Assembly (NCBI GenBank): GCA_964270895.1
Contig: OZ185436.1
From: Podarcis filfolensis
Lineage: Eukaryota
Strand: one strand, 5' to 3'
DNA: 64,000 nt
Shown here: positions 8,762-60,360 of the stretch, piece by piece
Layout: every line of letters begins with the position of its first letter
Position numbering within the stretch: the first letter of the stretch is position 1
The notes under the pieces: model-generated
Databases searched by the model: none
Told to the model about the DNA's origin: nothing
What the model saw: only the letters and a program-made list of their open reading frames with translations
Position numbers and translations under genes: made by a program

Positions 8762-10371
8762 CCCTATACGGATCCATCTCCACTGGAGAAATAAGCAGTT
8801 GTTCACATATCACATAATTAAACTGACATTCACTAATATCACTTGGTGATAAAAGTGCACCTTTCCACCAAGAATTGGGCACTGACAACAGCAAAAAAGG
8901 TGGAAAATGTTCAGTGGTGGCATGGTGGAATAATTCCATTTGTAGTTTCTTCTTCTGCCGTCTATATTTTAATCCAGGCAGTTTAGGACTCTTTGTTGTG
9001 TGAGCCTGGCTAGAAAGTGGGAGATCAAATTGGATGTCAGTTAACTGAGTTTCAGAACTGCCGTTTGTCACAATATTAGGTTTTTTTAGAAGTGTTTAAT
9101 AAGGACGCCTCCCAAAGATTACTTTCTGGCATGGTGATTTCTTCTGTGAATAGTTCAAAACTGTGAGTCACCACCTCCCAAACGAATCTGCATTTCAAAA
9201 GTTTCCAAGATGGGATGAGAGATTTGTCATTTCAAAAATCTGCCAGTAAATCAGCTTCACAATGTAAAAATGCACATGCGAACCAGACAGTGAGTGGTGA
9301 TGTCAGACATCAGTTGAAAAAACATTTGTTTGTTGATAGCTTCTTTGTTACCAACTTGGTGAAATGGCTCCTGGCCTCCTCAGATCATTACACTGTATTT
9401 GGAACTTTAGAAAGTAACAGAACAGAGAGGTCCCTGCCTCAAATAGGTTACAATCTAAATTTCTATACAGCGAGACTGGGAGAGAGCAGAATACCCAAGA
9501 AGACACAAATCTAATTACTGTATAATGGAGAGTCTTGTGGCAATCTGAATACTAACAAATGTACTCTGGCATAGGTTTTAATGGACTACAGTTCGCTTCA
9601 TCAGCTACATTAAGTTTTATCTTGAGATGTAAACATTGAGGTCAAAAGGAAATGAAATGCAGAAAAGTATAGTTAAAATTATATTACTAACAGTGGTCAT
9701 TCACACATACACAAACACACACAAAATCCAGAAGTGTAGATAACATAGACATTGTGGCATTGCTTAGCCAATTAACACATGTAGTGTGATAGAAACTAGT
9801 TGTTATTCCACTAATTCACTCTGCAAGTGTCTGGCGACACAATCACACAACTTAATAAGTCATCCACAACTTCAGCCGTTCATTCCCGTCCTTTCAATGT
9901 GATTTATGGCATTATCTGCCAACAATGGCCCCTTTGCATTCTGCATAGGGCAAACAGATCTACACAAAAGAATGGACACAAATCTGACATCAGAAATGGC
10001 CATATCCAAAAATATGTATACTTCGTAAATGCATACATTTATTCATTACAGTTATTTTATCCTACCTTTCAGGATATAAATCCCATCAAGTCAGCTTACA
10101 AGTAACATGCAATTGCATATTACTTTTAGAGGGAGACCATAATGTGAAACCGCTAAATTACTTCATCAAGAAGTTAAATACTATGGCTTGTGGTTTGAAT
10201 CAGGATAAGGGATTTTTATCACACTGCATGTGTCAATTGGCTTACCAATATCAGGTTCCCAGTGTTATCAACAGCTTTTCTGTGTGTGAATGGCCACCAT
10301 TAACCATGTAATTATCACTATCTAGATTTCATTTCCTTCTTACCTTATCATTTACAGTTCCTTTCCATGTA

Positions 10372-10612
10372 CAGTGGTCCTCGGGTTAAGTACTTAATTC
10401 GTTCCGGAGGTCCGTTCTTAACCTGAAACTGTTCTTAACCTGAAGCACCACTTTAGCTAATGGGGCCTCCTGCTGCCGCCGCGCCGCTGCTGCACGATTT
10501 CTGTTCTTATCCTGAAGCAAAGTTCTTAACCTGAAGTACTATTTCTGGGTTAGCGGAGTGTGTAACCTGAAACATATGTAACCTGAAGCGTATGTAACCC
10601 GAGGTACCACTG
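10372..10612 (+). mobile_element. Tc1/mariner (pogo/Tigger-like) MITE
   Basis: TA|cagtggt...cgggtt and aacccgaggtaccactg|TA ends; near-identical copies at 44930-45155 and (reverse) 46072-46313. Confidence 0.9.
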
Positions 10613-38004: not shown

Positions 38005-39788
38005 GAGTAAACCCTACATAATTATGGAGTGGAGCCCTTAAGGTGGTTGGATGGCACATTGTACGCCGTCACCTGACAACTGCAGCCAAGCTGGTGTCAG
38101 ATGTATTGCTCCGCTATCAGCGAGGTCAAGAGAGTGGTCTTCTGGGCAGCCCACAACCTCACACACACTGCCCAGGCTTGCAGCCCAGACAGGTCACTTG
38201 GGTGCTGCTAATGCAGCAGTTTGACTTCGCCCCCGAAGCACACAACATTGTCTCTTGAAACAGACAGATGCCAACAAAACAAGCTTTTTCATGAAACCCA
38301 AAATCCTCATTCTGCCTACCAGCCCTTATTCATCTGGTCCCTGGATTAATGACTACTAACTCATTCTTTGAAATGTCTTCCATTTTCATGATCTCTTTTT
38401 GTGCATCATTTCGTGGAAAAGGAACTTGGAAATAAAGACTTTCTTCCTCATTTTCTTTTGTGGTTTTATGTGGAAACCTAAGAAATAGAAAAGGGGAAAT
38501 GATAACCAGTACTCTAGCCAATCAGAAATTGGCTACTTCCTGATGTTTAGAGTTGCTAGGTAGAAAATGCTTCACAAAAGGCTCAAGCTGTACTTCTGCC
38601 TTTGTTATGAGAGAGCAGTAGCTTGTTTAGCAGTTGTGTTCCAATGCTTCCTAAGCAAACAGGTCATTTTTAAAAAATTGAGCTGCTAAAATTTCCACCA
38701 GAAGTAGCTAGACGAGAAATAAAAAGAATGTATATTCTTGTACACCTTCAGCACAGGATTGTTACAGGGCAGAACTCCTATTTCCTTTTGATCTTGAAGG
38801 ATTCATGTGCTCGAATCCTGCTTGCTGCTTTCCCACAGGCATCTCATTGGCCACTGTGAGAGCAGGATGCTGGACTAGATGGGCCATTGGCATCCAGCAG
38901 GCTCTTATGTTCTTAATGTTCACACAGACTAGCAGTGGCTCTCTGGGGCTTCAGACAATGGTTTCTCCCATTTCCTACTTGGGGACCAAACCAGGGAAAG
39001 CAAGCATTCATTCAATCAATACCCCACAGCAGTGGTGATGCCACTTCACTTCAGGGTACAGGCATCTGTGTGCCATTGTGGGGTGTGTTCACACCACAAT
39101 GTTTGCACATCTAGTTTCATAAGCTGGGAGGTGGAGGGGGCAGGAGATGAATACCAAAGGTATTGTAGGTAGAAGGTTGGCTCACCCTCTCCCACTCTTC
39201 CTACTCACCCAATTTCATTAAAACTACATGTAACACTGCTCTACAAATATTCTTGTCAAGAGTGCTTGTGACCTAATATCACTGTTACGAATGAGAGAGT
39301 TGCACATCACAGGATGCAAGAAGAAGCCACGCAACAAGTAGTGTGTTATTTTAGAGATGAAAGTATTTGGGGATTTGTTTACAAAATCAGTTCTGTACCA
39401 AGAGAAGCTCAAATGTCTGAGCTACATCTGTTGTACAAATCAAGCATATCTTTGCTTATTTTGCATTATTTGGCTTTTGCTGGTCATGTGATGATGCAAG
39501 CTGATACGCAGGCACTGAAGTTTTACCCTTCAGTATCTGGAAATCTTCAATATGATCCCCTAGTCGCCAACATACTTTCAAACCTGCTAGTTAAAGACAC
39601 TAGCCGAATGTAGAGGATTTATCTGCTAATGTGGACTCTAGTCTACAAAGGTCCTGTAATAAATCAGTTAACACTGGTAACGAGCATGGTACCCACAAGA
39701 TGTTTTGAAATAGACTTCACCAATCGCACCTGGCTGGGGCTGATGGGAGATGGAGTCCAAAGCATCTGGAAGGCATCTGATTGACATA

Positions 39789-41835: not shown

Positions 41836-42045
41836 CCTGACAACCGGTGATGTCATCTGAGTAGCCAATGAGATTTTTTAAAAAGTTAAAGCTGGGATAA
41901 TTTGCTTACGACCTGTGTGTTGGTACTGGTGGGGGTGGAGGAAGGACTTGAAGGGGTTTTCCAATTTTTTACGTCCTGCAACTTTCACTTCCCATTTCTG
42001 TGCTTCTAGAAGCTTCTGAGGAGCGCAGCAGCCTTTATAGAGCTC
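41836..42045 (+). promoter_or_regulatory. CD74 proximal promoter: X1-X2 box, inverted Y box, kB, Ets-IRF, TATA-like
   Basis: X1 CCTGACAACCGGTG 41836-41849; X2 TGATGTCA 41848-41855; AGCCAATGAG 41863-41872; GGGGTTTTCC 41953-41962; ACTTTCACTTCC 41981-41992 (reverse GGAAGTGAAAGT); TTTATA ~42034. Confidence 0.8.
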
Positions 42046-42111: not shown

Positions 42112-42176
42112 ATGGAAGATGACAGGAACAACCTTCTCCCCAATACATACACTGGCTCTGCTCCAGTGCCAGAAAG
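42112..42176 (+). CDS. CD74: CD74 exon 1 (coding part)
   Basis: accATGG Kozak; [22 protein letters not shown]; phase-2 donor AG|gtacat matches exon 2. Confidence 0.85.
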
Positions 42177-45100
42177 GTACATAGGATTGCATGTGTGTTC
42201 TTTCCCCCCACTACCTTGCACTTTTAATAATTTGTATGGGGTAAATAAGCATCAAGGTTTCCCACTGTAAACTCTCTGCCCCCTAGAAAGGCAGCCTGGC
42301 AGTGCCAGCCCCACCATTAGGCAAAGTGCGGCAGCTGCCTCAATCAGTAGGTTTTAAATATCATGAAAAGGCATCATATTGAAAGGTATTTAATGTGTAT
42401 TATATTTTTATCGCTGGGGAGGTGGGAAGGTGTTTGCAGGATTTTCTTTCTCAGGTACTAAAATAACTGGACTGGTCTTAGACATTTTGCATCTTTCTTT
42501 TCTTTTCTTTTCTTTTTGATGGTGGTAGTGTGGCACCTTGTGTTGCTCATGATGTTGTATCAGGCTAAGAGGTAGTATCTGTGCGTACTTTCTGTGTAAC
42601 TGCCAGCAGGTCCCAACTATGTGGGCAGAAAGTGATGGTAAGGTATAGCACTCAGCTTTCTATCCCTCTAAAATGAAAGGCTAAAACAGAAAAATATTTG
42701 GTAGCGTAAGTTGGGTGGTGGCGGAATTAACTGAAGCTGCAAACCTGTACGCATTTACCTGGGAGTAAGCCCCTTTGTACACAGTGAGACTTGGGAATAG
42801 GATTGCGTTGCAGAAATGACTCCTGCTTGTTTGCAACCCAGCGAGGTTCGAACAAAGCTACTTTATATTTCTCCTCATGCTGAATTGCAGATCTTTGCTA
42901 CAGTTAGTTCTGCCACAGTTAGTGTTGTCTCATACCTGGGCTGTTTTTCATAACTGAAAGGAAAAGTTTGGTGCAATTGATGCTCTTTAACTTTTATTCT
43001 TGCCTGCACCTCTCCAAATAAGGGGCGATTGGTGTGTTTTATATAGTCTCAGCCCTATATTTTATAACAATTCTTTGGAACTTTTGTATTTACCAGCCAC
43101 CACTAAGCATTTGAGGGGAGAGGATGTGTTCTTTCTTTCTTACCTTTTTATCCTGCGGGAAAGGCTATTTTACTTTTGAGGGAGGAGGAAATGGAAAGTA
43201 AAAAAATCAGAGTGTGAGCTTGATTGTTTAGTAAGGATTTGAGCCTGGATTTCTATATGCAAACTAACCTCTCTAGCCCTTGCACCACACTTACTTTTCT
43301 TAGTGTGCCTCCATTTTGTATGTCATGCTTTCAGGTTTCTTGTCTTTTTATTAATACATGGCGAATAATGATTTCTTAACAACAGTGACCATTTCGGGGA
43401 ATTACACTGCTGCGACGCTGGCAAGAGGCAGTCCCTGCCAAACCAAACAGCCAAAGCCAATCAGATAATAGAGACATGGTGATGTCACTTGTTGCTAGGG
43501 AGAAAGGTGTTCAGAAAATTAATATCCATACTTTAACATTATAACAGACTTTCTGTCCCGCATGTTGAGTTATATGGAGTTAAACTATACTGGAGATGGG
43601 TTTTTATTTTTAAAGCAACAAGCATTATATTCTGCTTATGAATCAGATCACATTTAAAGCGAGTAACTTCCGCTTGGGCTGTCTAGACTTGAATTTACAT
43701 GACAGAGTATAACTGTTGGAACTTCACTGTTTCATAGAATTATAGAATCAGAGAATGTTACCCCATCAGTTGAAAGGTACCCCGAGGTACCAACCCCTGT
43801 AATGCAGGAATCTCAACTAAATAATGCCTGATAGCTGGTCATTCAACCATAGCTGTCAACGTTTTCCCTTTTTTAAGGGAAATTCCCTTATTCCGAATAG
43901 GATTCCTCGCAAGAAAAGGGAAAGGTTGACAGCTATGCATCCAACCGCTGCTTGAAAAACTCCAAGGAAGGAGAGTCCACAGCCTCCCAGGGCATGGGCG
44001 TAGCCAAGAGGGGGCAGGGATGGGCAGCTGCCGCCCTAAATCAAGTAAATCAGTACAAAATACTTCACTAACTGAGGTTCTTCCCTCCCTCAACATTAAG
44101 CCTGCTGCCCCCCATGTCCCAAGAGAGGCCTTTCCACTATCAAGCAGCTCTTACTGCTAGAAAGTTCTTCCTGGTATTTAGTAAAAATCTTCTTTCTTGT
44201 AACTTGAAGCCATTGTTTGGGTCCTAGCCTCCAGAACAGGAGAAAACAAGCTTGCTCCATCTTCCATAGGACAACCCTTTATTTGAAGAAGGTAATCTCC
44301 TCTCAATCGTCACTTTTTTTTACCAGGCTTAACATACTCAGCCCCCTCAACCATTCCTCATAAGGCTTCGTTCCAGACCCATTTATTATCTTGGTTACCC
44401 TCCTCATGTTCTAGCTTGTCAATATCCAGGGCTTTTTTTGAGTTCTGGCACCTCTCAGGTGGGCATCATTGCCGTTGTAAGAGAACAAGGGAGGCGTTCA
44501 TGGTGAGTTCCACCAACTCTTTTTTTAGAAAAATAGCACTGTGCGATATCCATCTTAAGTTGTGGCGCACAGAACTGGACACAGTATTTCTTGTGTGGTC
44601 TGACCAAGGCAGAATAGAGCTGGACTATGACTTCCCGTGATGATGACTCTTCACTTCTGTTGATGCCACCTTTAGGGTTTGTTTGTTTGTGTTTGCTTGC
44701 TTGCTTGTTTGTTGCTGCATCACACTGTACCTTCTGGTGGATTAAGCAGGTGCTGTAAATGATTGGGAACTGTTTTAAAAATAATATTGATTATTGAGAG
44801 TATTAATATAAAACAGCCCCCCCTTGCACTGTATTTCATGATTCAATTTAGATTTTTGTAAGCACCATGTATTCTGCAAATAGGAATAAGAATTTCTGTT
44901 TAGCATAATATTCAGTCCCATTGCTAATACAGTGGTACCTCGGGTTCAGTACTTAATTCGTTCCGGAGATCCGTTCTTAACCTGAAACTGTTCTTAACCT
45001 GAAGCACCACTTTGGCTAATGGGGCCTCCTGCTGCCGCCGTGCCGCCAGAGCACAATTTCTGTTCTCATCCTGAAGCAAAGTTCTTAACTCGAGGTACTA

Positions 45101-48100
45101 TTTCTGGGTTAGCGGAGTCTGTAACCTGAAGCGTATGTAACCCAAGGTACCACTGTATTAAATAGCCAATCCAAACATCTCTTCTATTAAAACAAAAAAC
45201 AAAATCCTGGTTTTCTTAGCCACCACTAAGTATTTTTTGGGTGTGGGGATCTGTTCCTTCCCCCCCTTCCCCCCCTGCCCCGAAAAGCTACTTTACTTCT
45301 GAGGGAGGAGGAAATGGAATGCAACTGCTTTCCCTTTTCCTACACATGCAGTTACTGTGTTACTTGTTTCCCTCAAGAAACTCTAAAATACAACATTTTA
45401 GCATCATAACAGCCCCATAAAGTTGTCTGGGTTAAAGAGCTGAAAAAAGCGCCTAGTAAGCTTGATTTGAACCTGGGTTTTCACATGCAAGCCAACCTCT
45501 CTAACCCTTGCACCACACCTACAAAATGGAGGCACGCTAAGAAATGCATGTCATGTTCTTAGGTTTCTTGTCTTTTCATTTTTATTTGGTGAATAATGAT
45601 TTTTTAACAACAGTGACCATTTTGGGGAATTACCGAACAGCCAAAGCCAATCAAATAACAGAGATATGATGATGTCACTTGTTACTAGGGAGAAGGGTGT
45701 TCAGAAAGTTAATATCCATACTTAAACATTATAGCAACCTTTTTGTCCTACAGGATGATTTACATGGAGCTAAACTGTACTGGAGATGGATTTTTTTTTT
45801 TAAGCAACAAGCATTACATTCCTCTCTGAATCAGATCCAGAACATTTAAAGCAGATGAATTTAGCTAGGGTTTTTAAGTCTTGAATGTACATGACAGGGG
45901 ACATAAATAATAGGACTTCAATGTTTAGTAGAATTATAATTCTTCTGATAGAATAATAAGCTGCTGTGAGTGATTGAGTACTCTTTCTAAAAGTTAATTG
46001 TTTTTAATAAAAGTAGTCACAAAACAATGTGTGTGACAGGCAGTAGTTTAGAAGAGATTAATATGCCATTACAGTGGTACCTCGGGTTACATACGCTTCA
46101 GGTTACATACACTTCAGGTTACAGACTCCGCTAAGTCAGAAATATTACCTCGGGTTAAGAACTTTGCTTCAGGATGAGAACAGAAATTGTGCTCCGGCAG
46201 CACGGTGGCAGCCGGAGGCCCCATCAGCTAAAATGGTGCTTCAGGTTAAGAAAAGTTTCAGGTTAAGAACGGACCTCCGGAACAAATTATGTACTTAACC
46301 CGAGGTACCACTGTATTGCAAAGCTTGCTCGTTATATAAAAGAAGGTAGAAGAGAAGCATAACAAACATATTTAGAACTATTAAACATTTGTTGATTCTT
46401 GGCACTAGAACATATTTTCAAAATGTTATTTATCTGAAATGTTGCAAATGATTGATTTATATTTAACTGTGTTTGTGTTTATGGTTATATGAGAATTCAG
46501 ATGGAATTATCTGCATTTGTGTTTTATTTTAAAGCAAATAAACCTTTTTCTTTTTTTAAAAAAGGGCATCATTCTCCTTTTAATCACAGAAATGAGTATT
46601 TCTCAGGGGGTGTCTGCCGCACATAACACATGCATTCACCATTTGAAAGAGAGAACACTTTGTTGTGTGTGTTAAACTTGCTTTATTCATGTGCAGATTA
46701 ATGCGAATTTACTCGACTGAATAAAACGCCTATGATTGATCAACTGTCAAGGTATCTTTAATCTGGTGGCAGCCCTAATAAATACAGGGAGAATTATTGA
46801 TGTAACTGAAGGTCAAACTTCACATTACAATAGACATGCCTAAATGTATCTTCATCTATTTAAAATGTAGCTGTGGGGAGGGGAAAGGGGACATCGAGAG
46901 AGACATCCAATATGGAAGCACAGCATATGGAAAATAATTATCCCTTTCCCCCAGTGGCGTAGCGTGGGTTGTCAGCACCCGGGGCAAGGCAAGTAATTTG
47001 CACCACCTAACCCCCAGATGTTGCACCCGGTGCGGCCGGCCCCCCCTGCACCCCCCACGCTACGCCACTGCTTTCCCCTTTCACTATTTCCCCAATGAAC
47101 TTCCCCCACCCCACCCAAACTGCTACTTACCCCATTAGTAAAATCATACTAATGGGGTAAGTAGCAGTCATCAAAAAATCAATGAGGCTCATAGCAGCTT
47201 CAGTGTGCCTCCTGACTTACTTGCATTGAGCTCCTCCATGTAAGGGGTGAGCTGGATTGGCTGGATATTAAATAAACTTTTAATAAAACCATTTCACCTA
47301 ATTTAGCCCTTCGTTAACCAAGTCAAAGCATTCTGTTTGTGTTACAAGCCAGAGATATTCCGTGCCTTGGTAATTTGCATACAGGTGAATCTAAACCTGT
47401 TCTAAGAAAATAAGCTCTCAACCTGGACATCTGGACCACTGATTGGACAAACTGACATGCCTCTTTTGTACCTTGCAGGGGTTCTTCCAGCCGTAAACCT
47501 GCCTATGCTGCCTTTTCCATCCTGATAGCCTTGCTTATCGCGGGCCAGGCAGTGACTGGCTACTTTGTGTATCAGCACAACACCCAGATTTCCAAAGTAA
47601 CCAAGACTGCCACTGAGCTGAAACTGCAGTCGCTGGCCAGCAATCTCCCTCATGGTTAGTAGCTTCCTTCTTCCTCTTCCTGCCCTCTCCCCCACTCCGA
47701 CACTGTCTAACCTTTAAGTTTAACCATGGTATATTTGCAAGCATTCTTAATTCTTAAAACATTTCTCATTTTTTTGTGTTAATTGTGCAAATCAGAGCTG
47801 AAGGGACTGAGTCTGGGTCTGTCAGCTGTTTATGCACTTGAATCCTGATAGCCATCTCTTGTCTGCTTGCATAGACAGACCAGATGATAGTTTACTTTAT
47901 TTATTAAATTTATATCCCACCCCTCCTCCCAAAGAAAGGAAGGTCTAGTGGATCTACAGATTCAGAATGCTGACATTTTAATCTGGGGAGCAGTCACCCT
48001 GTTCTGATCAGGTTTAGTCATGCTTATTGTGAGTTTTATAGCTGCAGTTTATATTCTGCTCTTGGGTTGCTTTCATGACTGTTACATATTGTACATTAAC

Positions 48101-51100
48101 AGTTTATATCCATTTATAATTAATAAAAACACAAAAAGAAGCATTCTGCCCCTGAAGTCCGACACGGTACAACTTGAGCAAGGTTGTGCACCCTGTAGTT
48201 AGCATGGATGAGTAGGTTAGTGTTGTCAGTTGTGCAAGAGCCCTTCATAATATATTTGGATATGTGAAGGGCTATAGTTTGGTGGCAGCATGGTGTCCTC
48301 CATTAGTTTGAATCATCCTTTTTTAAAAAAGCTATCTGAGCTTTTGGACAGTTTTGAGGGATTTCCCTCCTAGGGGTAGAGTTTGGAAAGCAGTTTCTAA
48401 TATGAGATTGGGGGGGGGGGCGTCTACTACTGGGGGGGGGAACAAGTCTAAGTTTCCACTTTTGAGTCCAGCTCAGACATCTTGATTGAAGTCATGAACT
48501 CTCTGTGCAATATACCGTATTTTTCGCTCTATAAGACGCACCAGACCATAAGATGCACCTAATTTTTGGAGGAGGAAAACAAAAAAAAAAAAAAAATATT
48601 CTGAATCTCAGAAGCCAGAACAGCAAGAGGGATCACTGCGCAGCGATCCCTTTTGCTATTCTGGCTTCTGGGATAGCTGTGCAGCATGTGTTCGCTCCAT
48701 AAGACGCACACACATTTCCCCTTACTTTTTGGGAGGGAAAAAGTGAGTCTTATAGAGCAAAAAATACGGTAATTTGTACTCTTGTATGTTTGACTCATCT
48801 GTATAAGAGGAATATCCTTGGGGGAGACCACTTTTTTAAAAATAACAATAAAAATCTTCCTACATGTTTAATTGCACCACTCTTTTCTCCTGCAGCTCCC
48901 AAGGCAGTTAACCAGAAGAGAATGGCAATGGCCAACATTATGCCTATGGTCATGAGGGACCCAGATGAAGAGGTAAAGATGACAATTGCTTAACTAGTAC
49001 ATGGCGGGGAGGTGTTAGGGTTGCCTACTGCCTCGGAACCTCTCCTTTTCATCCATACAACTTGCCCGGTATGGATCCAAGTTTGCAGGGGACAGCTATG
49101 GATGAGGGGGAAGACATTCGTTCTGTCTTCTGGGGCCTTTCCTTTCCAGCCAGTCTGCCAATACAAAAACAACCCCTCCTGGCTAGTATGCAATGCTCCC
49201 AGCACCTAGACCTTATACCAGTGTTAGAAATAAACGTTAGGGTCTTGAGACTGACAGGTCCTGCCTCAAATTAAGCTGTGCAGAGAGATTCCATTTGAAA
49301 CAGAGCAGGGAGAGTGAGTTGGCTCGACATGAGTCAATGTGACATGAGTGAAGCTGACAGCCTATTAGGTCAGCTCTGTTCTCAGTTCTTATTTGGTCAC
49401 TTTGCAGTATGTAGGAATGGTTTGCCAGGGAATTAGCCTTCTTGTCAACGTTCCCTAGAGGTGGCGGCAACCAGGGAATGCTCCCAAAGCTGTTTTTGGG
49501 ACACCCCAGAACCCTTGGGAGGAAGTTCATACTAATGGTTTGGATCCCAATTTAAGTTCATTCCATATTGTTTCCCTTTAACGATACTTAAATGAGATCC
49601 GGATCACAAAAAAAGTTGCAACTACATTTTCACATTGAGTTCAAAGAGACCTGGGTGTAAGTAAGTCCACTGTATCTGTTGCAGCGTGTGAAGGACAGGG
49701 AAGAGCCCTTTGTGTAGTCTGCTCTGTGGGATTGGGCAAGGAGCAGCTTCATAGTGTGACAAATGTTGCATGCCAACCCCAATCTATGCCAAGATTCCAG
49801 GGGTGTTCTAGGTGCTCACCCAGGGCTGTGTTTTTGTTGGGAAAATCGTGGCACAGTGGAGGCTAGCGTCTTTAAGAAATAAGGTTTATTGTACACATAT
49901 TTACACCTGGAGTCTTCAATTGGGGGTGTAGAACAGGACACCCCAAGAGTGTTTCTCATTGCCTCTCTCATAGCTTCGGGGTTCAAAGCAGCAGTCAGTC
50001 ATGCATGGGCATAGCCAAGGGGGTGGGGGGCAGCTACCATCCCAATCAAGTAAGTAAATAACAATACTTAACTGACCAATCGTGTCACAGATAGCTCAGT
50101 TCTGCCCCCCCAACATGAAGCCTGCCCCCATAACATAAATCCTGGCTACGCCCAGGCAGTCATGGTTCCTGGTATCTTGGTGCAGCCTCCTCCATCCAAT
50201 GCCACCCATTCCTACTTTTTCCTTGTTCCCAGAACACCTTTAGATTTCAAAAGGACAATTTTTCCTGTGATATCATGCCCTGATCACCTTGGTAATCTCC
50301 CAAATCTCCTGTCTTTGTCCACTCCTGGGGCATGGGCAGGGGGAAGGATGGCTTTGTGCATTGCCAGTTGTCCTAAATGGCCCAGCACCCGACTCCCCAT
50401 TGTTTCTCAATGACTCTGCACTTAGCTGGCCCAAGCAGACTGGTTTGCATAAGCTAACCCATGTCTGGCACAGTTCTGCAGCTTGCATTTCCCTTCATAT
50501 TATCTAAATACTACCGTTTATTAATTTCTACCATTCACTAACAGACTCTGGTACCCTAGATCTATTTAAAAAATTAAATTCTTTGTTGTCGTCTCTTCTA
50601 CAGTCTCCAGAGGATAAAATGAAGCTGACCAATAGCACTGAAGACCAGATCAAACGTCTGCTCATGGTAAGAGCCTCGTCACCTTGCTTGTGAAACAGTT
50701 TTGCTTGTCTTAGATGGAGAGTACTCAAGTTTGCAGCTACAGACTCAACCGCTGGAGGCCTAGGGCTGAATCCCACGAAGTCATCCTGTTAGCCCAATAA
50801 CTTCCACTTGCTCAATGGAACACCTTCTAGCACTCCTCTTCCTGTGGGCCACCCAACCCACTGGGGCAGATTTGAAGAGGGAGGTAGAGGATGCACAGGC
50901 ACAACTTTGTTGGCTGCAACTCATAGCACAGAACAAGCTATTCTTTATGTTCATAAAAATCACTAACCTATTATTTGTTTTCCAACCACAGTATCTGACA
51001 GGTGTGTTTGTGTTCTCGGGAAGGATTGGGGATATTTATGCAGGGATCTAAATGAGGGAAGGGTGGACATGGGTTTCATTGCTTTTAGTGCACCAGTTGG

Positions 51101-56692: not shown

Positions 56693-57951
56693 AAGGAAAC
56701 CCTACTGAAACAATTTTAACAGTCACACACAGAGAGAGGGAGAGCCTTATTAGTGACACACAGTCTTGAATTTGGACACCGACATGGCCAACCACTTTCC
56801 TGTCCCAAATTTGGGCACCAATGCAATGCTTAAAAAAAGAATGATCCCTCCTTCTGTGATTTCAGCTGTTTCTGAAATAAAAGCCCGCAGCCGAGATTTT
56901 CATACCAATTAGCCACTCAGCAGTGGTCGGACACATTCCCATTAGCAGAATTTATATTAATACTGCCTCCATTAAGCAGTACTCATTAGCATTTGCTCTC
57001 ATTAGGCTAAATGGGTTCCCTGGGAGCCATCCCAATAAAATAGCTGTCCTAATTAAACGGGCATATTGTTACAAAAAGCAATTCTTTCCTCACATCCCCC
57101 CTTTACTTTCCCATGGTGCAGCCACAATGAAACAGCCTCTTCTCATATTAGGAGGCAGTTGATACATTCAGCCAAACCAAAAAGGATTGTTTCTCCTGGA
57201 CTTTCAGTTTCAAAGCTGCTTCTGTGGAGCTGGGGAATGCTTCCAGCTGTGCTATTTTTCTATAAGCGGGGAGCATTCAAGTATTTGGTGCCAACTTACC
57301 ACCTGAAGTGCTGTGGTGCAGGGAAAGCTTTACCTCTGAACTTAGCCATATGTCTCAAGCAAGGCAAGGGAGCTGTTCAGTTGTAGTTAACAGTTGCATC
57401 AAAGGGCAGTGCTAGCAGCTGGCAGTCAACTGTGCACACTGAAGTTTCTGTTTTTGTTTTGTTTAAAGTGAAAACCAAGTGCCAGACAGAAGAATGTGGT
57501 CGGGGTGTCCACCTGGGAAGATTCTGTGCCAAGTGTGATGAAAATGGCGACTATCTGCCTAAGCAATGCCATGGTAGCACTGGCTTTTGCTGGTGCGTCT
57601 ACAAAAATGGCACCATGGTTGAGGGCACTACTAAAGTCCGTGGGCCACTGGACTGCACTGGTAAAGAGCTTCTGTTTCCTATCAAGGGGGAAAGGAGTTA
57701 ATAAGCAAGCAGATGTCCTTTATATTCTTGAATAAACTGGATTGTCTAGAGTTAGGGAGCAACATCTTAATGGCCCAAGTCCTAGGAGCTAATGAGTCTC
57801 TCCCCCCCCCCCACCCCGACCTGGAATTGAGTCCTAAACACAGCCCAAGTGTTTGCACTGCAACAGCCATTGTTACAGCTGTAGCAGTGTTCTTTCCTTT
57901 TTCTAAATAGAAGAGATGAAGTCAGGCAGTGGAGTTTTTTTGGAGATATAG
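42112..57951 (+). CDS. CD74: MHC class II invariant chain (CD74/Ii), p41-like form 259 aa; 195 aa if the Tg exon is skipped
   Basis: join(42112-42176,47479-47654,48896-48972,50604-50666,52811-52906,53642-53711,57469-57660,57911-57951) = 780 nt with consistent phases; DxxxLL N-tail, [27 protein letters not shown] region, trimerisation helix [13 protein letters not shown], Tg type-1 domain. Confidence 0.95.
43455..43515 (-). promoter_or_regulatory. Inverted MHC-II X1-X2-Y enhancer module, copy A
   Basis: Minus strand CCTAGCAACAAGTG (43486-43499), TGACATCA, 21-bp spacer, CTGATTGG (43457-43464). Confidence 0.85.
43735..44670 (-). mobile_element. CR1 LINE 3' fragment interrupted by nested MITEs
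   Basis: atagaatc tail; aaactccaaggaaggagagtccac, gaaagttcttcct, cagaactggacacagta...ggtctgaccaaggcagaatag CR1 3' blocks; inserts at 43848-43937, 43993-44116 and ~44440-44545. Confidence 0.8.
44930..45155 (+). mobile_element. Tc1/mariner (pogo/Tigger-like) MITE
   Basis: TA-flanked cagtggtacctcgggtt...aaggtaccactg; same family as 10372-10612. Confidence 0.9.
45645..45705 (-). promoter_or_regulatory. Inverted MHC-II X1-X2-Y enhancer module, copy B
   Basis: Minus strand CCTAGTAACAAGTG (45676-45689), TGACATCA, 21-bp spacer, TTGATTGG (45647-45654). Confidence 0.8.
46072..46313 (-). mobile_element. Tc1/mariner (pogo/Tigger-like) MITE
   Basis: TA-flanked reverse-orientation copy of the same family. 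Confidence 0.9.
46952..47070. mobile_element. hAT-type MITE
   Basis: 16-bp TIR cagtggcgtagcgtgg / ccacgctacgccactg; perfect 8-bp TSD ctttcccc. Confidence 0.9.
47479..47654 (+). CDS. CD74: CD74 exon 2 (transmembrane)
   Basis: [58 protein letters not shown]. Confidence 0.97.
48515..48769. mobile_element. Tigger-like MITE
   Basis: TA|ccgtatttttcgctctataagac ... gtcttatagagcaaaaaatacgg|TA. Confidence 0.88.
48896..48972 (+). CDS. CD74: CD74 exon 3 (CLIP)
   Basis: [26 protein letters not shown]; tgcag| and |gtaaag. Confidence 0.95.
49760..50470 (-). mobile_element. Possible LTR-like element with nested MITE
   Basis: Minus-strand AATAAA (~49884) and TG/CA-like ends; interrupted by the 50004-50156 MITE; family not identified. 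Confidence 0.3.
50004..50156. mobile_element. hAT-type MITE
   Basis: Ends catgggcatagcc / ggctacgcccagg; perfect 8-bp TSD cagtcatg; relatives at 43993-44116 and ~62930-63040. Confidence 0.85.
50604..50666 (+). CDS. CD74: CD74 exon 4
   Basis: 63 nt, [24 protein letters not shown] sequon. Confidence 0.95.
51330..51934 (-). mobile_element. Solo LTR (same family as 39789-40560)
   Basis: Shared blocks cagttgagcagac, gaggaatcac, ccccacctggccagctagtga, cccaccatgttcatgg, tcctgccagt-catg-ca; minus strand starts TGTCATGG and has TATAAAA; left end unclear. Confidence 0.6.
52811..52906 (+). CDS. CD74: CD74 exon 5
   Basis: 96 nt, [32 protein letters not shown]. Confidence 0.97.
53003..53124 (-). mobile_element. 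tRNA(Lys)-derived SINE with CR1-like 3' tail
   Basis: Minus strand tagagcatgagactcttaatctcagggccatgggttcgagcctcac (tRNA-Lys CTT-like anticodon arm and B box), then gcagggggctggactag...ccttccaactctatgatc CR1 tail. Confidence 0.8.
53642..53711 (+). CDS. CD74: CD74 exon 6
   Basis: [23 protein letters not shown]; donor G|gtatgc. Confidence 0.97.
54497..54717. mobile_element. Tigger-like MITE (one end truncated)
   Basis: gtaccttggttt ... aaaccaaggtaccactg|TA. Confidence 0.7.
56643..56688. repeat. (AT)23 microsatellite
   Basis: Read directly. Confidence 0.95.
57469..57660 (+). CDS. CD74: CD74 exon 6b (thyroglobulin type-1 domain, alternatively spliced in mammals)
   Basis: 192-nt symmetric phase-1 exon: [64 protein letters not shown]. 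Confidence 0.97.
57911..57951 (+). CDS. CD74: CD74 exon 7 (coding part)
   Basis: Polypyrimidine tract + atag|; [13 protein letters not shown]; acidic Ser-Gly GAG-attachment-like motif; donor CAGG|gtgggc after 57956. Confidence 0.7.
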
Positions 57952-58957: not shown

Positions 58958-60360
58958 GCAGTGGAAAATAATATGCCCAAATGTTAATAATTTTGTGTAT
59001 TACTAAAAAATAATAATAAGATAGATGAAAAACAAACGATTGTGCTGCTGGCTGAACATGAGATAGCACAAACTGGTAGGAAGCATCCTAAAGGTGATGT
59101 GGAAACAAGAGGATATCTTAGGGCATTGGAAAGTGCTAATCTCTCTCTCTCTTCCTCCCTTTTCCAGGAAAAGGGCAACTGGTGAACGTGACAGCTGGTG
59201 ATACTGAGAATGTGACAGCTTCTCAGCTGAGCTTCAGTGACTAAATGATTGAGGTAACTTAAGGATTTTGCTGGCTCAAACCAAAGACCTGTCTAAGCCC
59301 ACCATTGTTTTACCCCCATAGTGGCCAACCTGATGTCCATAGGGAACCCACAAGCAGGAGATGAGGATCATAGCACTCTCTCTGTTGTTCCCAGTGACTG
59401 GCAAATCAGAGGCATGGTGCCTCTGATCCTGGAGGGAGCATACAGTCATCATGGCAGGAGCCATTGATCACCTTATCCTCCCTGAAAGTAGCTGGCTTAG
59501 TTCAGGAGAGCCTAGGAGTTCACCTTGAAGGCACCTTTCATTTCGGTGCTGGTGTTCTCAGCTACATACACAAGAGAGCAAGCCAAGTACTTTGTTTTTA
59601 AATGTAGGTGCCTTTTTTAAACAGTCTGTACAGATTGAATGGGCCACACAGTTCCTGCGGTTGGCAAGGCCTTCTATGTGCAGATAGTGGCACATCCAGC
59701 CTCTGCCTATCTTTTTTTAAAGCCTGAAATACAGATATTCTCTAGGTGTCGAAGGCAGAGTGGGTTTTGTGGGGGGGGGGGTGCGTGTGGAAAACGATAG
59801 GTATACAAGCCAAATTAGGATACCTCCCCACCTCAAGGCCTAACAGTTAAAGGCACCATTAACTTTAAGGGGCAGAACAACACAAGTTCTGTGGGGGTTG
59901 GCTTTTTGTGTACTTTCCATCAATTTCTGCCTCTGTATTACTAGGAAACATTTCTGGGGCTTGACACACCTTTCTCATTTCTCTTCTTTCTTCAGGAATG
60001 CCAAGCAAACAAGGCAGGCAGTAGCACCAGCTGCATCAGCTCAAGAAGCCCAGCTTATCTTCTCCAGTTTGCTCTCGTTTTTTGCTTCTGTATTGATTTC
60101 CTGAATTATGTTAGCCGCAACCACTTCTAAAATTCCTAGGCTTAAGCATTATCCTTAATGGAGGAGGGAAAAGTAGGTTGATTAAATATAATAGCTTGCT
60201 GAGCTGAGCCCTGAATTACCTTTTTAGAGAAGTAACCCTTGTACAACCACAGCTTTAGCAGCAAAATGCTTCAAGCAAGAAAGGGTGATGTTTTCCTCAA
60301 TTATTCAGCTCATGCAGAGAGGATCTTTTTTCCCCCTGAATAAACCCTGCAGTGATTCTT
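58958..60360 (+). other. CD74: Probable CD74 last exon / 3' UTR
   Basis: Acceptor cctttctctctacag| at 58957; candidate AATAAA 60339-60344; 3' end uncertain. Confidence 0.45.

What the first reader, a model, noticed from the sequence alone, without database searches (positions are those of the whole stretch)
43095..45940. Duplicated inverted MHC-II X1-X2-Y enhancer in CD74 intron 1
Two collinear ~700-bp copies each carry, on the minus strand, a near-textbook class II module: copy A CCTAGCAACAAGTGACATCA-N15-CTGATTGG (43457-43499) and copy B CCTAGTAACAAGTGACATCA-N15-TTGATTGG (45647-45689). The 43-bp cores differ by 5 transitions and no indels, keeping the helical X1-Y spacing (21 bp) and an identical X2, while the flanks show indels. 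Both copies also keep a kB-like GGGGAATTAC and a purine-rich GAGGAGGAAATGGAA (ETS/PU.1-like). Inverted S-X-Y-like enhancers in intron 1 of mammalian CD74 bound by RFX/CIITA are established. Finding them in a lizard, with a local duplication giving three X-Y modules in 4 kb, suggests a deeply conserved and lineage-amplified CIITA enhanceosome cluster.
Basis: partly seen in the sequence, partly recalled or inferred. Interest (0 to 1): 0.78.

Follow-up and report, generated by a model that had tools for sequence, protein, structure and literature searches.

The report
Duplicated class II-type enhancer in lizard CD74
Intron 1 of a lacertid lizard's CD74 gene holds two old copies of a short switch built like the X1-X2-Y control module of MHC class II genes; one copy sits at the same place in other lizards, a gecko and a turtle, so this known mammalian type of enhancer is ancient in reptiles and was duplicated in lacertids.

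Summary
Two collinear copies (A 43095-43745, B 45217-45940) lie in intron 1 of CD74 (+ strand; exon 1 42112-42177, exon 2 47468-47653). Each carries a minus-strand X1-N3-X2-N15-Y module (43457-43499, 45647-45689). The pattern occurs 3 times in the window against 0.01 expected.

It is not a dispersed repeat as far as could be tested. There are no further copies in the window or in ten fetched CD74 loci. Genome-wide copy number was not tested.

Both copies are present in Podarcis lilfordi, Lacerta agilis and Zootoca vivipara, with A and B each monophyletic. Rhineura, Tiliqua, Sceloporus, Eublepharis and the turtle Emydura have one inverted module at the orthologous intron-1 place. X1-to-Y spacing is identical in all but Tiliqua. 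X1 and Y are the best-conserved positions and the spacer is poorly conserved. A brown snake keeps only X1.

The element is therefore an old sauropsid conserved non-coding element, duplicated before the lacertid radiation. RFX/CREB/NF-Y/CIITA binding is inferred from architecture and literature, not shown. Evidence that copy B is still under constraint is weak.

Three related features were found. An inverted upstream module lies at 38518-38560. The promoter module lies at 41836-41872. A third, forward intronic module present in the other lacertids is deleted in this window at 47262/47268.

This is a new member of a known kind, of moderate interest.

The parts
38518..38560 (-). Upstream inverted X1-(X2-like)-Y module 'U', 3.6 kb before the CD74 ATG. 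It has the same 43-bp architecture as A and B, with an AGGAAGT (ETS-type) core between X2 and Y.
   Evidence: The conserved block of about 150 nt aligns in the other three lacertids (89-97% by BLAST), Rhineura, Tiliqua, Sceloporus and Eublepharis (two copies); a matching inverted module in the turtle was found by the motif scan, not by BLAST.
41836..41872 (+). Promoter-proximal forward module 'P': X1-like CCTGACAAC, X2 TGATGTCA, then CCAAT 29 nt after the X1 start. It lies about 240-275 nt before the ATG.
   Evidence: It is 87% identical to the snake promoter. The same X1-X2-CCAAT offset is seen in gecko, turtle and quail.
42112..42177 (+). CD74 exon 1 coding part (ATG at 42112).
   Evidence: tblastn with Podarcis lilfordi CD74 P0049, 22/22 identical.
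43095..43745 (.). Copy A of the duplicated unit.
   Evidence: Orthologs are 90-96% identical in three other lacertids. It aligns over about 510 nt to the single copy of Rhineura and about 300 nt to Tiliqua.
43345..43535 (-). Central conserved block of copy A. Reading along the minus strand it holds an S-position block, a pyrimidine tract, X1, X2, Y, a post-Y block and the AATTCCCC block.
   Evidence: It is the only intron-1 stretch that BLAST aligns to snake (43355-43533, 71%, E 3e-15). It is 88.9% identical to B against 75.8% in the flanks.
43457..43499 (-). Copy A X1-X2-N15-Y core.
43746..45216 (.). Spacer between the copies. Most of it is shared with other lacertids at lower identity. It includes a hairpin element at 43848-43937 and a young SINE at 44926-45142.
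   Evidence: The spacer is 87-88% identical to other lacertids. The SINE has 3 full copies in the window and is absent at this site in the three other lacertids.
45217..45940 (.). Copy B of the duplicated unit. It lacks 38 nt next to Y and carries a micro-inversion at 45517-45551.
   Evidence: Orthologs are 89-93% identical in three other lacertids.
45647..45689 (-). Copy B X1-X2-N15-Y core.
47262..47268 (.). Breakpoint of a deletion, relative to other lacertids, that removes the third, forward intron-1 module 'C'.
   Evidence: Window 47071-47262 matches L002 up to 14562 and window 47268 onward matches L002 from 15370. Module C lies at L002 15179-15251.
47468..47653 (+). CD74 exon 2 (transmembrane segment). 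It marks the end of intron 1.

Best explanation
Copy A is the lacertid ortholog of an ancient sauropsid intron-1 enhancer of CD74, built like an MHC class II X1-X2-Y (S'-Y'-type) module in inverted orientation. Copy B is its paralog. B arose by a local duplication of about 0.7 kb several times older than the Podarcis/Lacerta/Zootoca split, and transposons later pushed the two copies apart.

Proposed mechanism (inferred, not shown): the RFX complex binds X1, a CREB/ATF factor binds X2 and NF-Y binds Y. They bind cooperatively because the spacing is fixed, and the complex recruits CIITA. With the promoter module (41836-41872) and an upstream inverted module (38518-38560), this ties CD74 transcription to MHC class II expression in antigen-presenting cells and after interferon-gamma.

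Shown here: sequence, position, duplication history, and deep conservation of motifs and spacing. Inferred: the bound factors and enhancer activity. Whether B still acts is open, at about even odds.
For: The architecture is exact in both copies and far above chance: 3 hits against 0.01 expected.

The location in CD74 intron 1 rests on exon homology and RPS14 synteny.

An inverted module with X1-start to ATTGG = 38 nt lies 1.2-1.7 kb after the ATG (about 1.5 kb after the exon aligned as exon 1 in Sceloporus) in Rhineura, Sceloporus, Eublepharis and Emydura. The distance is 37 nt in Tiliqua.

Over 7 lineages the mean pairwise identity is X1 0.88, Y 0.80, pyrimidine tract 0.72, X2 0.63, spacer 0.55 and outer flanks 0.27-0.47. 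X1 is the single best-conserved 9-mer of 252. This pattern of conserved motifs, fixed spacing and a free spacer is the one reported for mammalian XY boxes (PMC4381081).

A and B are each monophyletic across 4 lacertids, with support 100/99.

Fixed A/B differences are symmetric: 50 derived on A against 45 on B, and 7 against 4 in the central block. The central block is less diverged than the flanks.

The A unit is more conserved among lacertids than the intron background: 91.3% against 87.5%, p=0.006.

Mammalian Cd74 has two intron-1 enhancers that bind CIITA in vivo (PMC2883540). S-Y modules work in either orientation (PMC1802633).
Against: No textbook S box was recognised, only a conserved block at -14 to -30.

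X2 varies. It is changed in 3 of 8 lacertid copies and degenerate in Sceloporus, Tiliqua and the snake.

The 43-bp core is no better conserved between A and B than its immediate neighbours.

Within the lacertid crown the central block does not evolve more slowly than the unit's flanks.

The B unit is at intron background (87.1% against 87.5%) and its crown is about 1.6 times longer than A's.

The snake has lost Y and part of X2. No intronic module was found in quail.
Confidence: 0.7

Rival explanations
1. Only copy A is a working enhancer. Copy B is a passenger of an old segmental duplication, drifting neutrally, and its motifs survive by chance.
For: The B unit is as variable among lacertids as the intron background. 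The B crown is about 1.6 times longer than the A crown. B lost 38 nt next to Y that all other squamates keep. X2 is mutated in P. lilfordi B. The ETS-like motif decays in Lacerta and Zootoca B. With 12.5% variable columns, 16 invariant X1+Y positions in B have probability of about 0.12 by chance (derived).
Against: X1 and the Y core are intact in all four B orthologs after a long stem of 0.10 substitutions per site. Fixed differences in the central block are not skewed toward B: 7 on A against 4 on B. Motif positions differ at 2 of 28 between A and B, against 24% in the outer flanks (binomial p about 0.02).
Confidence: 0.35
2. The high A-B similarity of the central block reflects an old gene-conversion tract in the lacertid stem rather than selection on both copies.
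For: The central/flank divergence ratio is 0.45 for A against B, but 0.65-0.73 for comparisons with Rhineura and Tiliqua, and about 1 within the lacertid crown.
Against: A and B are reciprocally monophyletic, so there has been no conversion since the crown. The same block is the only alignable intron-1 sequence out to snake, gecko and turtle, so constraint on it is independently shown. Flank identities to the outgroups are near the alignment floor, which inflates those ratios.
Confidence: 0.2
3. The unit is a dispersed repeat or transposon fragment that happens to contain X/Y-like motifs.
For: Part of the unit (43236-43294) looked like an antisense tRNA-derived SINE head by eye. Transposons are abundant around it.
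Against: No other copy was found in the 64-kb window, while a control SINE gives 3 full copies. In ten loci of 23-40 kb each, the unit occurs only at the orthologous intron-1 place. ARAGORN and Rfam find nothing tRNA-like. Syntenic conservation extends to a turtle.
Confidence: 0.02
4. The inverted modules act mainly as promoters, either of an antisense or enhancer RNA running toward exon 1, or of an intronic CD74 isoform as described in mouse. Under this reading they are not distal enhancers of the main promoter.
For: In class II genes the module sits within about 300 bp of a start site (PMC4243378). Mouse Cd74 intron 1 contains an interferon-gamma-inducible promoter helped by the intronic enhancers (PMC2883540).
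Against: No transcript data could be obtained. No conserved TATA or initiator was looked for or seen downstream of Y on the minus strand. This rival is not exclusive with enhancer function.
Confidence: 0.1

Closest known systems
Mammalian CD74 (Ii) intron-1 enhancers (Moore et al. 1998 J Immunol 161:1844; S'-Y' modules of Krawczyk et al. 2004 J Immunol 173:6200; both as cited in PMC2883540 and PMC1802633)
   Same: The gene and the intron are the same, and there is more than one module per intron. The composition is of the class II promoter type (X and Y boxes). The expected partners are RFX and CIITA.
   Different: Orthology to the reptile modules was not tested, because no mammalian locus could be fetched and the two papers are not held. 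In lacertids the second inverted copy comes from a separate, lineage-specific duplication. Other squamates have a different second module ('C', forward orientation). No binding or reporter data exist for reptiles.
Promoter-proximal S-X-X2-Y module of MHC class II genes (e.g. HLA-DRA)
   Same: The order X1, X2, Y is the same. X1 is CCTAGCAAC-like, X2 is CRE/TRE-like and Y is an inverted CCAAT. Spacing is fixed while the spacer sequence is free, as in PMC4381081 and PMC1802633.
   Different: The reptile modules are inverted and lie 1.3-3.6 kb inside the gene rather than within about 300 bp upstream of the start site. The S/W box is not recognisable. X1-to-Y distance is about 1 nt longer than I recall for HLA-DRA; that comparison is from memory, not a test.
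Distal S'-Y' enhancers of the human MHC class II locus and the RAB4B S-Y enhancer (PMC1802633, PMC2278383)
   Same: These are stand-alone X-Y modules away from the class II core promoters. They act in both orientations and depend on RFX and CIITA. They resemble the upstream module U and copies A and B in concept.
   Different: The loci differ. U carries an invariant ETS-type AGGAAGT between X2 and Y, which is not part of the canonical module.

Membership tests
MHC class II-type S-X-X2-Y (S-Y / S'-Y') enhancer module | X1 box (RFX site, CCTAGCAAC-like) | tested here: met
   CCTAGCAAC in A and CCTAGTAAC in B. It is invariant in each copy across the 4 lacertids. It is the most conserved 9-mer over 7 lineages.
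MHC class II-type S-X-X2-Y (S-Y / S'-Y') enhancer module | X2 box (CRE/TRE-like octamer) directly after X1 | tested here: met
   TGACATCA lies 3 nt after X1 in A and B. TGATGTCA is found in Rhineura, gecko and turtle. It is weakly conserved: degenerate in Sceloporus, Tiliqua and snake, and changed in 3 of 8 lacertid copies.
MHC class II-type S-X-X2-Y (S-Y / S'-Y') enhancer module | Y box (inverted CCAAT, CTGATTGG) | tested here: met
   CTGATTGG in A and TTGATTGG in B. ATTGG is kept in 13 of 14 aligned sequences and lost in the snake.
MHC class II-type S-X-X2-Y (S-Y / S'-Y') enhancer module | Fixed order, relative orientation and spacing of X and Y, with a poorly conserved spacer | tested here: met
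   X1 start to ATTGG is 38 nt in all lacertid copies, Rhineura, Sceloporus, Eublepharis and Emydura, and 37 nt in Tiliqua. Spacer identity is 0.55 against 0.88 for X1 and 0.80 for Y. It was not scored with the published position-weight matrix (PMC4381081).
MHC class II-type S-X-X2-Y (S-Y / S'-Y') enhancer module | S (W) box at a fixed distance upstream of X1 | tested here: inconclusive
   A block at -14 to -30 is conserved among squamates (identity 0.62-0.70), but no textbook S heptamer was recognised and no profile was available. Published work also fails to find S/W at many CIITA sites (PMC4381081).
MHC class II-type S-X-X2-Y (S-Y / S'-Y') enhancer module | Occupancy by RFX5/RFXAP/RFXANK, CREB, NF-Y and CIITA; RFX- and CIITA-dependent enhancer activity | not testable with these tools
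   This needs ChIP and reporter assays. Read-based data were unavailable.
Conserved non-coding element | Alignable at the syntenic position across distant lineages while surrounding intron sequence is not | tested here: met
   BLAST of the lizard 5' region against snake hits, within intron 1, only 43355-43533; its other hits are the promoter module, exon 2 and a short stretch 3' of RPS14. The same block is found in skink, iguanian, gecko, amphisbaenian and turtle.
Dispersed repeat / transposable element | Many copies at non-orthologous places | tested here: not met
   No extra copy was found in the window or in ten CD74 loci. Genome-wide copy number was not testable here.

The most novel reading that the evidence does not exclude
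CD74 in the amniote ancestor may already have carried an array of CIITA-type X-Y modules: one upstream inverted, one in the promoter, one intronic inverted and one intronic forward. The two mammalian intron-1 S'-Y' enhancers would then be its orthologs. Lacertids added a fifth module by a duplication retained for a very long time. This window's lineage then lost the ancient forward intronic module C by a deletion of about 0.8 kb. That would be a natural case of enhancer redundancy and turnover inside the class II enhanceosome network.
Probability: 0.35. Interest if true: 0.6.

Novelty: new member of a known kind. Interest (0 to 1): 0.45.

Why it matters
S-Y modules are among the few composite regulatory motifs strict enough to be read from sequence. 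Showing that CD74's intronic module keeps its place, orientation and base-exact spacing from turtle to lizards extends the RFX/CIITA enhanceosome logic of mammals to reptiles. It also gives a ready set of natural variants for testing how many X-Y modules CD74 needs and how redundant they are. The variants are a duplicated copy in lacertids, a decayed copy in a snake, and a deleted third module in this genome. It does not reveal a new kind of mechanism.

Tried and rejected

2. The idea that the core is more conserved than its flanks is rejected for the immediate flanks (88.4% against 89.1%). It holds only for the whole central block against the outer flanks.

3. Within-lacertid constraint tests have little power. 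The cores are 39/43 invariant each, not different from background, and the central/flank ratio is about 1.

4. The SINE or tRNA origin suspected by eye for 43236-43294 is unsupported; ARAGORN and Rfam find nothing.

5. The kappaB-like GGGGAATTAC is a conserved AATTCCC block in non-gecko squamates but only a half-site. A GAS reading (TTCCCCGAA) holds only in the A copies of the four lacertids (G to A in their B copies) and in Rhineura. Neither was adopted.

6. The ETS-like GAGGAGGAAATGGAA is conserved only within lacertids.

7. Placing the duplication before or after the amphisbaenian split failed. The tree puts Rhineura with B (89/91), but the AU test does not reject an A+B clade (p=0.15).

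8. Look-ups of Hemicordylus (P0006) and echidna (P0088) CD74 found no record, so no mammalian locus was compared.

9. Krawczyk 2004 and Moore 1998 are not held. The HLA-DRA sequence could not be retrieved from a paper.

10. The scan's earlier findings held nothing relevant.


Full report
**Observation**

On the minus strand, 43457-43499 reads X1 CCTAGCAAC, three bases, X2 TGACATCA, fifteen bases, Y CTGATTGG. At 45647-45689 the sequence is the same except for five transitions and no indel. One change is at the degenerate X1 position (GCAAC to GTAAC), three are in the spacer and one is at the first base of Y. The kappaB-like decamer (43396-43405, 45624-45633) and the purine-rich 15-mer (43182-43196, 45305-45319) are present in both copies.

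The repeat finder and MAFFT show two collinear units, A 43095-43745 and B 45217-45940. They differ by several rearrangements:
- a 38-nt indel next to Y;
- about 100 nt present only in B;
- a micro-inversion of about 30 nt (43289-43323 against 45517-45551).

The pattern X1-N26-Y with up to one mismatch occurs three times in the window against 0.01 expected from shuffles. The third site is 38518-38560, also on the minus strand.

**Context**

The window holds RPS14 followed by CD74, both on the + strand. tblastn with Podarcis lilfordi CD74 (P0049) places the exons as follows:

| Exon | Coordinates |
|---|---|
| 1 | 42112-42177 |
| 2 | 47468-47653 |
| CLIP exon | 48889-48972 |
| thyroglobulin-type exon | 57465-57665 |
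| last | 59167-59241 |

Both copies therefore lie in intron 1, inverted relative to the gene. Exon identities (77-100% per tblastn piece, mostly 90% or more) and the tree below show the source is a lacertid close to Podarcis.

Exon 2 went to the search of protein representatives. The big search was used because a single exon cannot find full-length relatives through the length-limited word search.

**Is it a dispersed repeat?**

BLAST of either unit against the window finds only the other unit, plus a weak 64-nt match of the A core to the module at 38.5 kb. A control SINE (44926-45142) finds three full copies. In ten CD74 loci from other species the unit occurs only at the orthologous intron-1 place. 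ARAGORN and Rfam find nothing in 43000-46400, so my by-eye impression of a tRNA-derived SINE head at 43236-43294 is unsupported.

**Other species**

Through P0007, the word search and the look-up of encoding contigs I fetched these CD74 loci:

| Locus | Species |
|---|---|
| L001 | Pseudonaja textilis |
| L002 | Podarcis lilfordi |
| L003 | Lacerta agilis |
| L004 | Zootoca vivipara |
| L005 | Rhineura floridana |
| L006 | Tiliqua scincoides |
| L007 | Sceloporus undulatus |
| L008 | Eublepharis macularius |
| L009 | Emydura macquarii (turtle) |
| L010 | Coturnix japonica |

All three lacertids have both A (90-96% identical to the window) and B (89-93%). The spacer between the copies is only 87-88% identical.

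Rhineura, Tiliqua, Sceloporus, Eublepharis and the turtle each have one inverted module at the corresponding place in intron 1. The positions are L005 11310-11365, L006 11660-11715, L007 12317-12372, L008 11187-11242 and L009 11351-11406. The snake keeps X1 and the flanking block but has a 2-nt deletion in X2 and a mutated Y. No intronic module was found in quail.

The distance from the X1 start to ATTGG is 38 nt everywhere except Tiliqua, where it is 37.

Mean pairwise identity over seven independent lineages:

| Feature | Identity |
|---|---|
| X1 | 0.88 |
| Y | 0.80 |
| pyrimidine tract before X1 | 0.72 |
| X2 | 0.63 |
| block in the S-box position | 0.62 |
| X2-Y spacer | 0.55 |
| outer flanks | 0.27-0.47 |

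X1 is the best-conserved 9-mer of the whole 260-column alignment, rank 1 of 252. Conserved motifs with fixed spacing and a free spacer are what Scharer et al. report for mammalian class II XY boxes (PMC4381081).

**History of the duplication**

In a maximum-likelihood tree A and B are each monophyletic across the four lacertids, with support 100/99. The duplication therefore predates their split, and no conversion has occurred since. Stem branches (0.10-0.11 substitutions per site) are several times the crown depth (0.02-0.05), so the duplication is old.

Rhineura groups with B (89/91), but an AU test does not reject an A+B clade (p=0.15). Whether the duplication followed or slightly preceded the amphisbaenian split is therefore open.

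Copy A keeps the 38 nt and the orientation seen in the outgroups. The deletion and the micro-inversion are B-specific and shared by all four B orthologs.

**Constraint**

Between paralogs the central block (43345-43535) is 88.9% identical against 75.8% in the outer flanks (p=5e-4). The 43-bp core (88.4%) is not better conserved than the rest of that block (89.1%). Within the core, motif positions differ at 2 of 28 and the spacer at 3 of 15.

Fixed A/B differences polarised with Rhineura are symmetric: 50 on A against 45 on B overall, and 7 against 4 in the central block.

Among the four lacertids the A unit has more invariant columns than the intron background (91.3% against 87.5%, p=0.006). 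The B unit does not (87.1%), and neither 43-bp core differs significantly from background (39/43 each). The B crown is about 1.6 times longer than the A crown.

The central/flank divergence ratio is 0.45 for A against B, 0.65-0.73 for comparisons with outgroups, and about 1 inside the lacertid crown. An old conversion tract in the stem therefore cannot be excluded, and current constraint on B is not shown.

**Other modules at the locus**

- **U** (38518-38560, minus strand, 3.6 kb upstream) has the same 43-bp architecture, plus an AGGAAGT core that is invariant in all but the second gecko copy among squamates and is not kept in the turtle. It aligns from lacertids to gecko, and a matching inverted module in the turtle was found by the motif scan.
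- **P** (41836-41872, plus strand) is X1-like plus TGATGTCA plus CCAAT at offset 29. That arrangement is shared by snake, gecko, turtle and quail.
- **C** is a third intronic module, in forward orientation and followed by a kappaB site GGGAATTTCC. It is present in P. lilfordi (L002 15179-15251), Lacerta, Zootoca, Rhineura, Sceloporus, Tiliqua and Eublepharis.

Module C is missing from the window. Relative to P. lilfordi about 0.8 kb is absent at 47262/47268. I could not tell a true deletion from an assembly fault.

**Mechanism and literature**

In mammals the S-X-X2-Y module binds RFX, CREB and NF-Y cooperatively and recruits CIITA. It is strictly conserved in order and spacing, and it works in either orientation in reporters (PMC1802633, PMC4243378, PMC4381081). 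Mouse and human Cd74 have two intron-1 enhancers that bind CIITA in vivo (PMC2883540, citing Moore 1998 and Krawczyk 2004; those two papers are not held).

By analogy, A most likely acts as an RFX/CREB/NF-Y/CIITA-dependent enhancer of CD74. That applies also to U, to P and, where present, to C. For B this is about an even bet. None of this binding is shown here.

I found no paper in the held library on such elements in reptile CD74.

**Verdict**

The functional claim remains inference. This is a new member of a known kind of enhancer, with an old retained duplication and a lineage-specific loss of a sister module as its more interesting aspects.

Noticed in passing
window 38470-38620 (core 38518-38560, minus strand): A third inverted X1-X2like-N15-Y module lies 3.6 kb upstream of CD74. 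It has an AGGAAGT (ETS/PU.1-type) core and an extra CCAAT between X2 and Y. It aligns from lacertids to gecko, with a matching inverted module in the turtle found by motif scan (AGGAAGT not kept there). Eublepharis has two copies (L008 5831-5916 and 8200-8290).
   Followed up: partly
window 47262-47268; L002 14562-15370: About 0.8 kb present in P. lilfordi is missing here; the corresponding interval is longer in Lacerta and Zootoca. The missing stretch contains a forward X1-X2-Y-like module followed by a kappaB site GGGAATTTCC, which is conserved from gecko to lacertids. It is either a real lineage-specific deletion or an assembly fault.
   Followed up: partly
window 41953-41965 and 41981-41992: The CD74 proximal promoter has a kappaB-type GGGGTTTTCC overlapping a CCAAT. 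It also has ACTTTCACTTCC, the reverse complement of an ETS-IRF composite GGAAGTGAAAGT. Both are largely conserved in the snake promoter.
   Followed up: no
window 44926-45142, 46101-46317, 10370-10583: Three copies of a young SINE are about 92% identical to each other. The two in CD74 intron 1 are in opposite orientation and are absent at these sites in P. lilfordi, Lacerta and Zootoca.
   Followed up: partly
window 43289-43323 against 45517-45551: A micro-inversion of about 30 nt distinguishes copy B from copy A. The A orientation matches Rhineura and Tiliqua, and all four lacertid B copies share the inversion.
   Followed up: partly
L001 11380-11610 (Pseudonaja textilis): The snake ortholog of the intronic module keeps X1 and the flanking blocks but has a 2-nt deletion in X2 and a mutated Y box. 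This may be decay of the module in this snake.
   Followed up: no
window 43848-43937: A 36-nt inverted-repeat pair is separated by 18 nt inside the spacer. It looks like a small hairpin (MITE-like) insertion.
   Followed up: no
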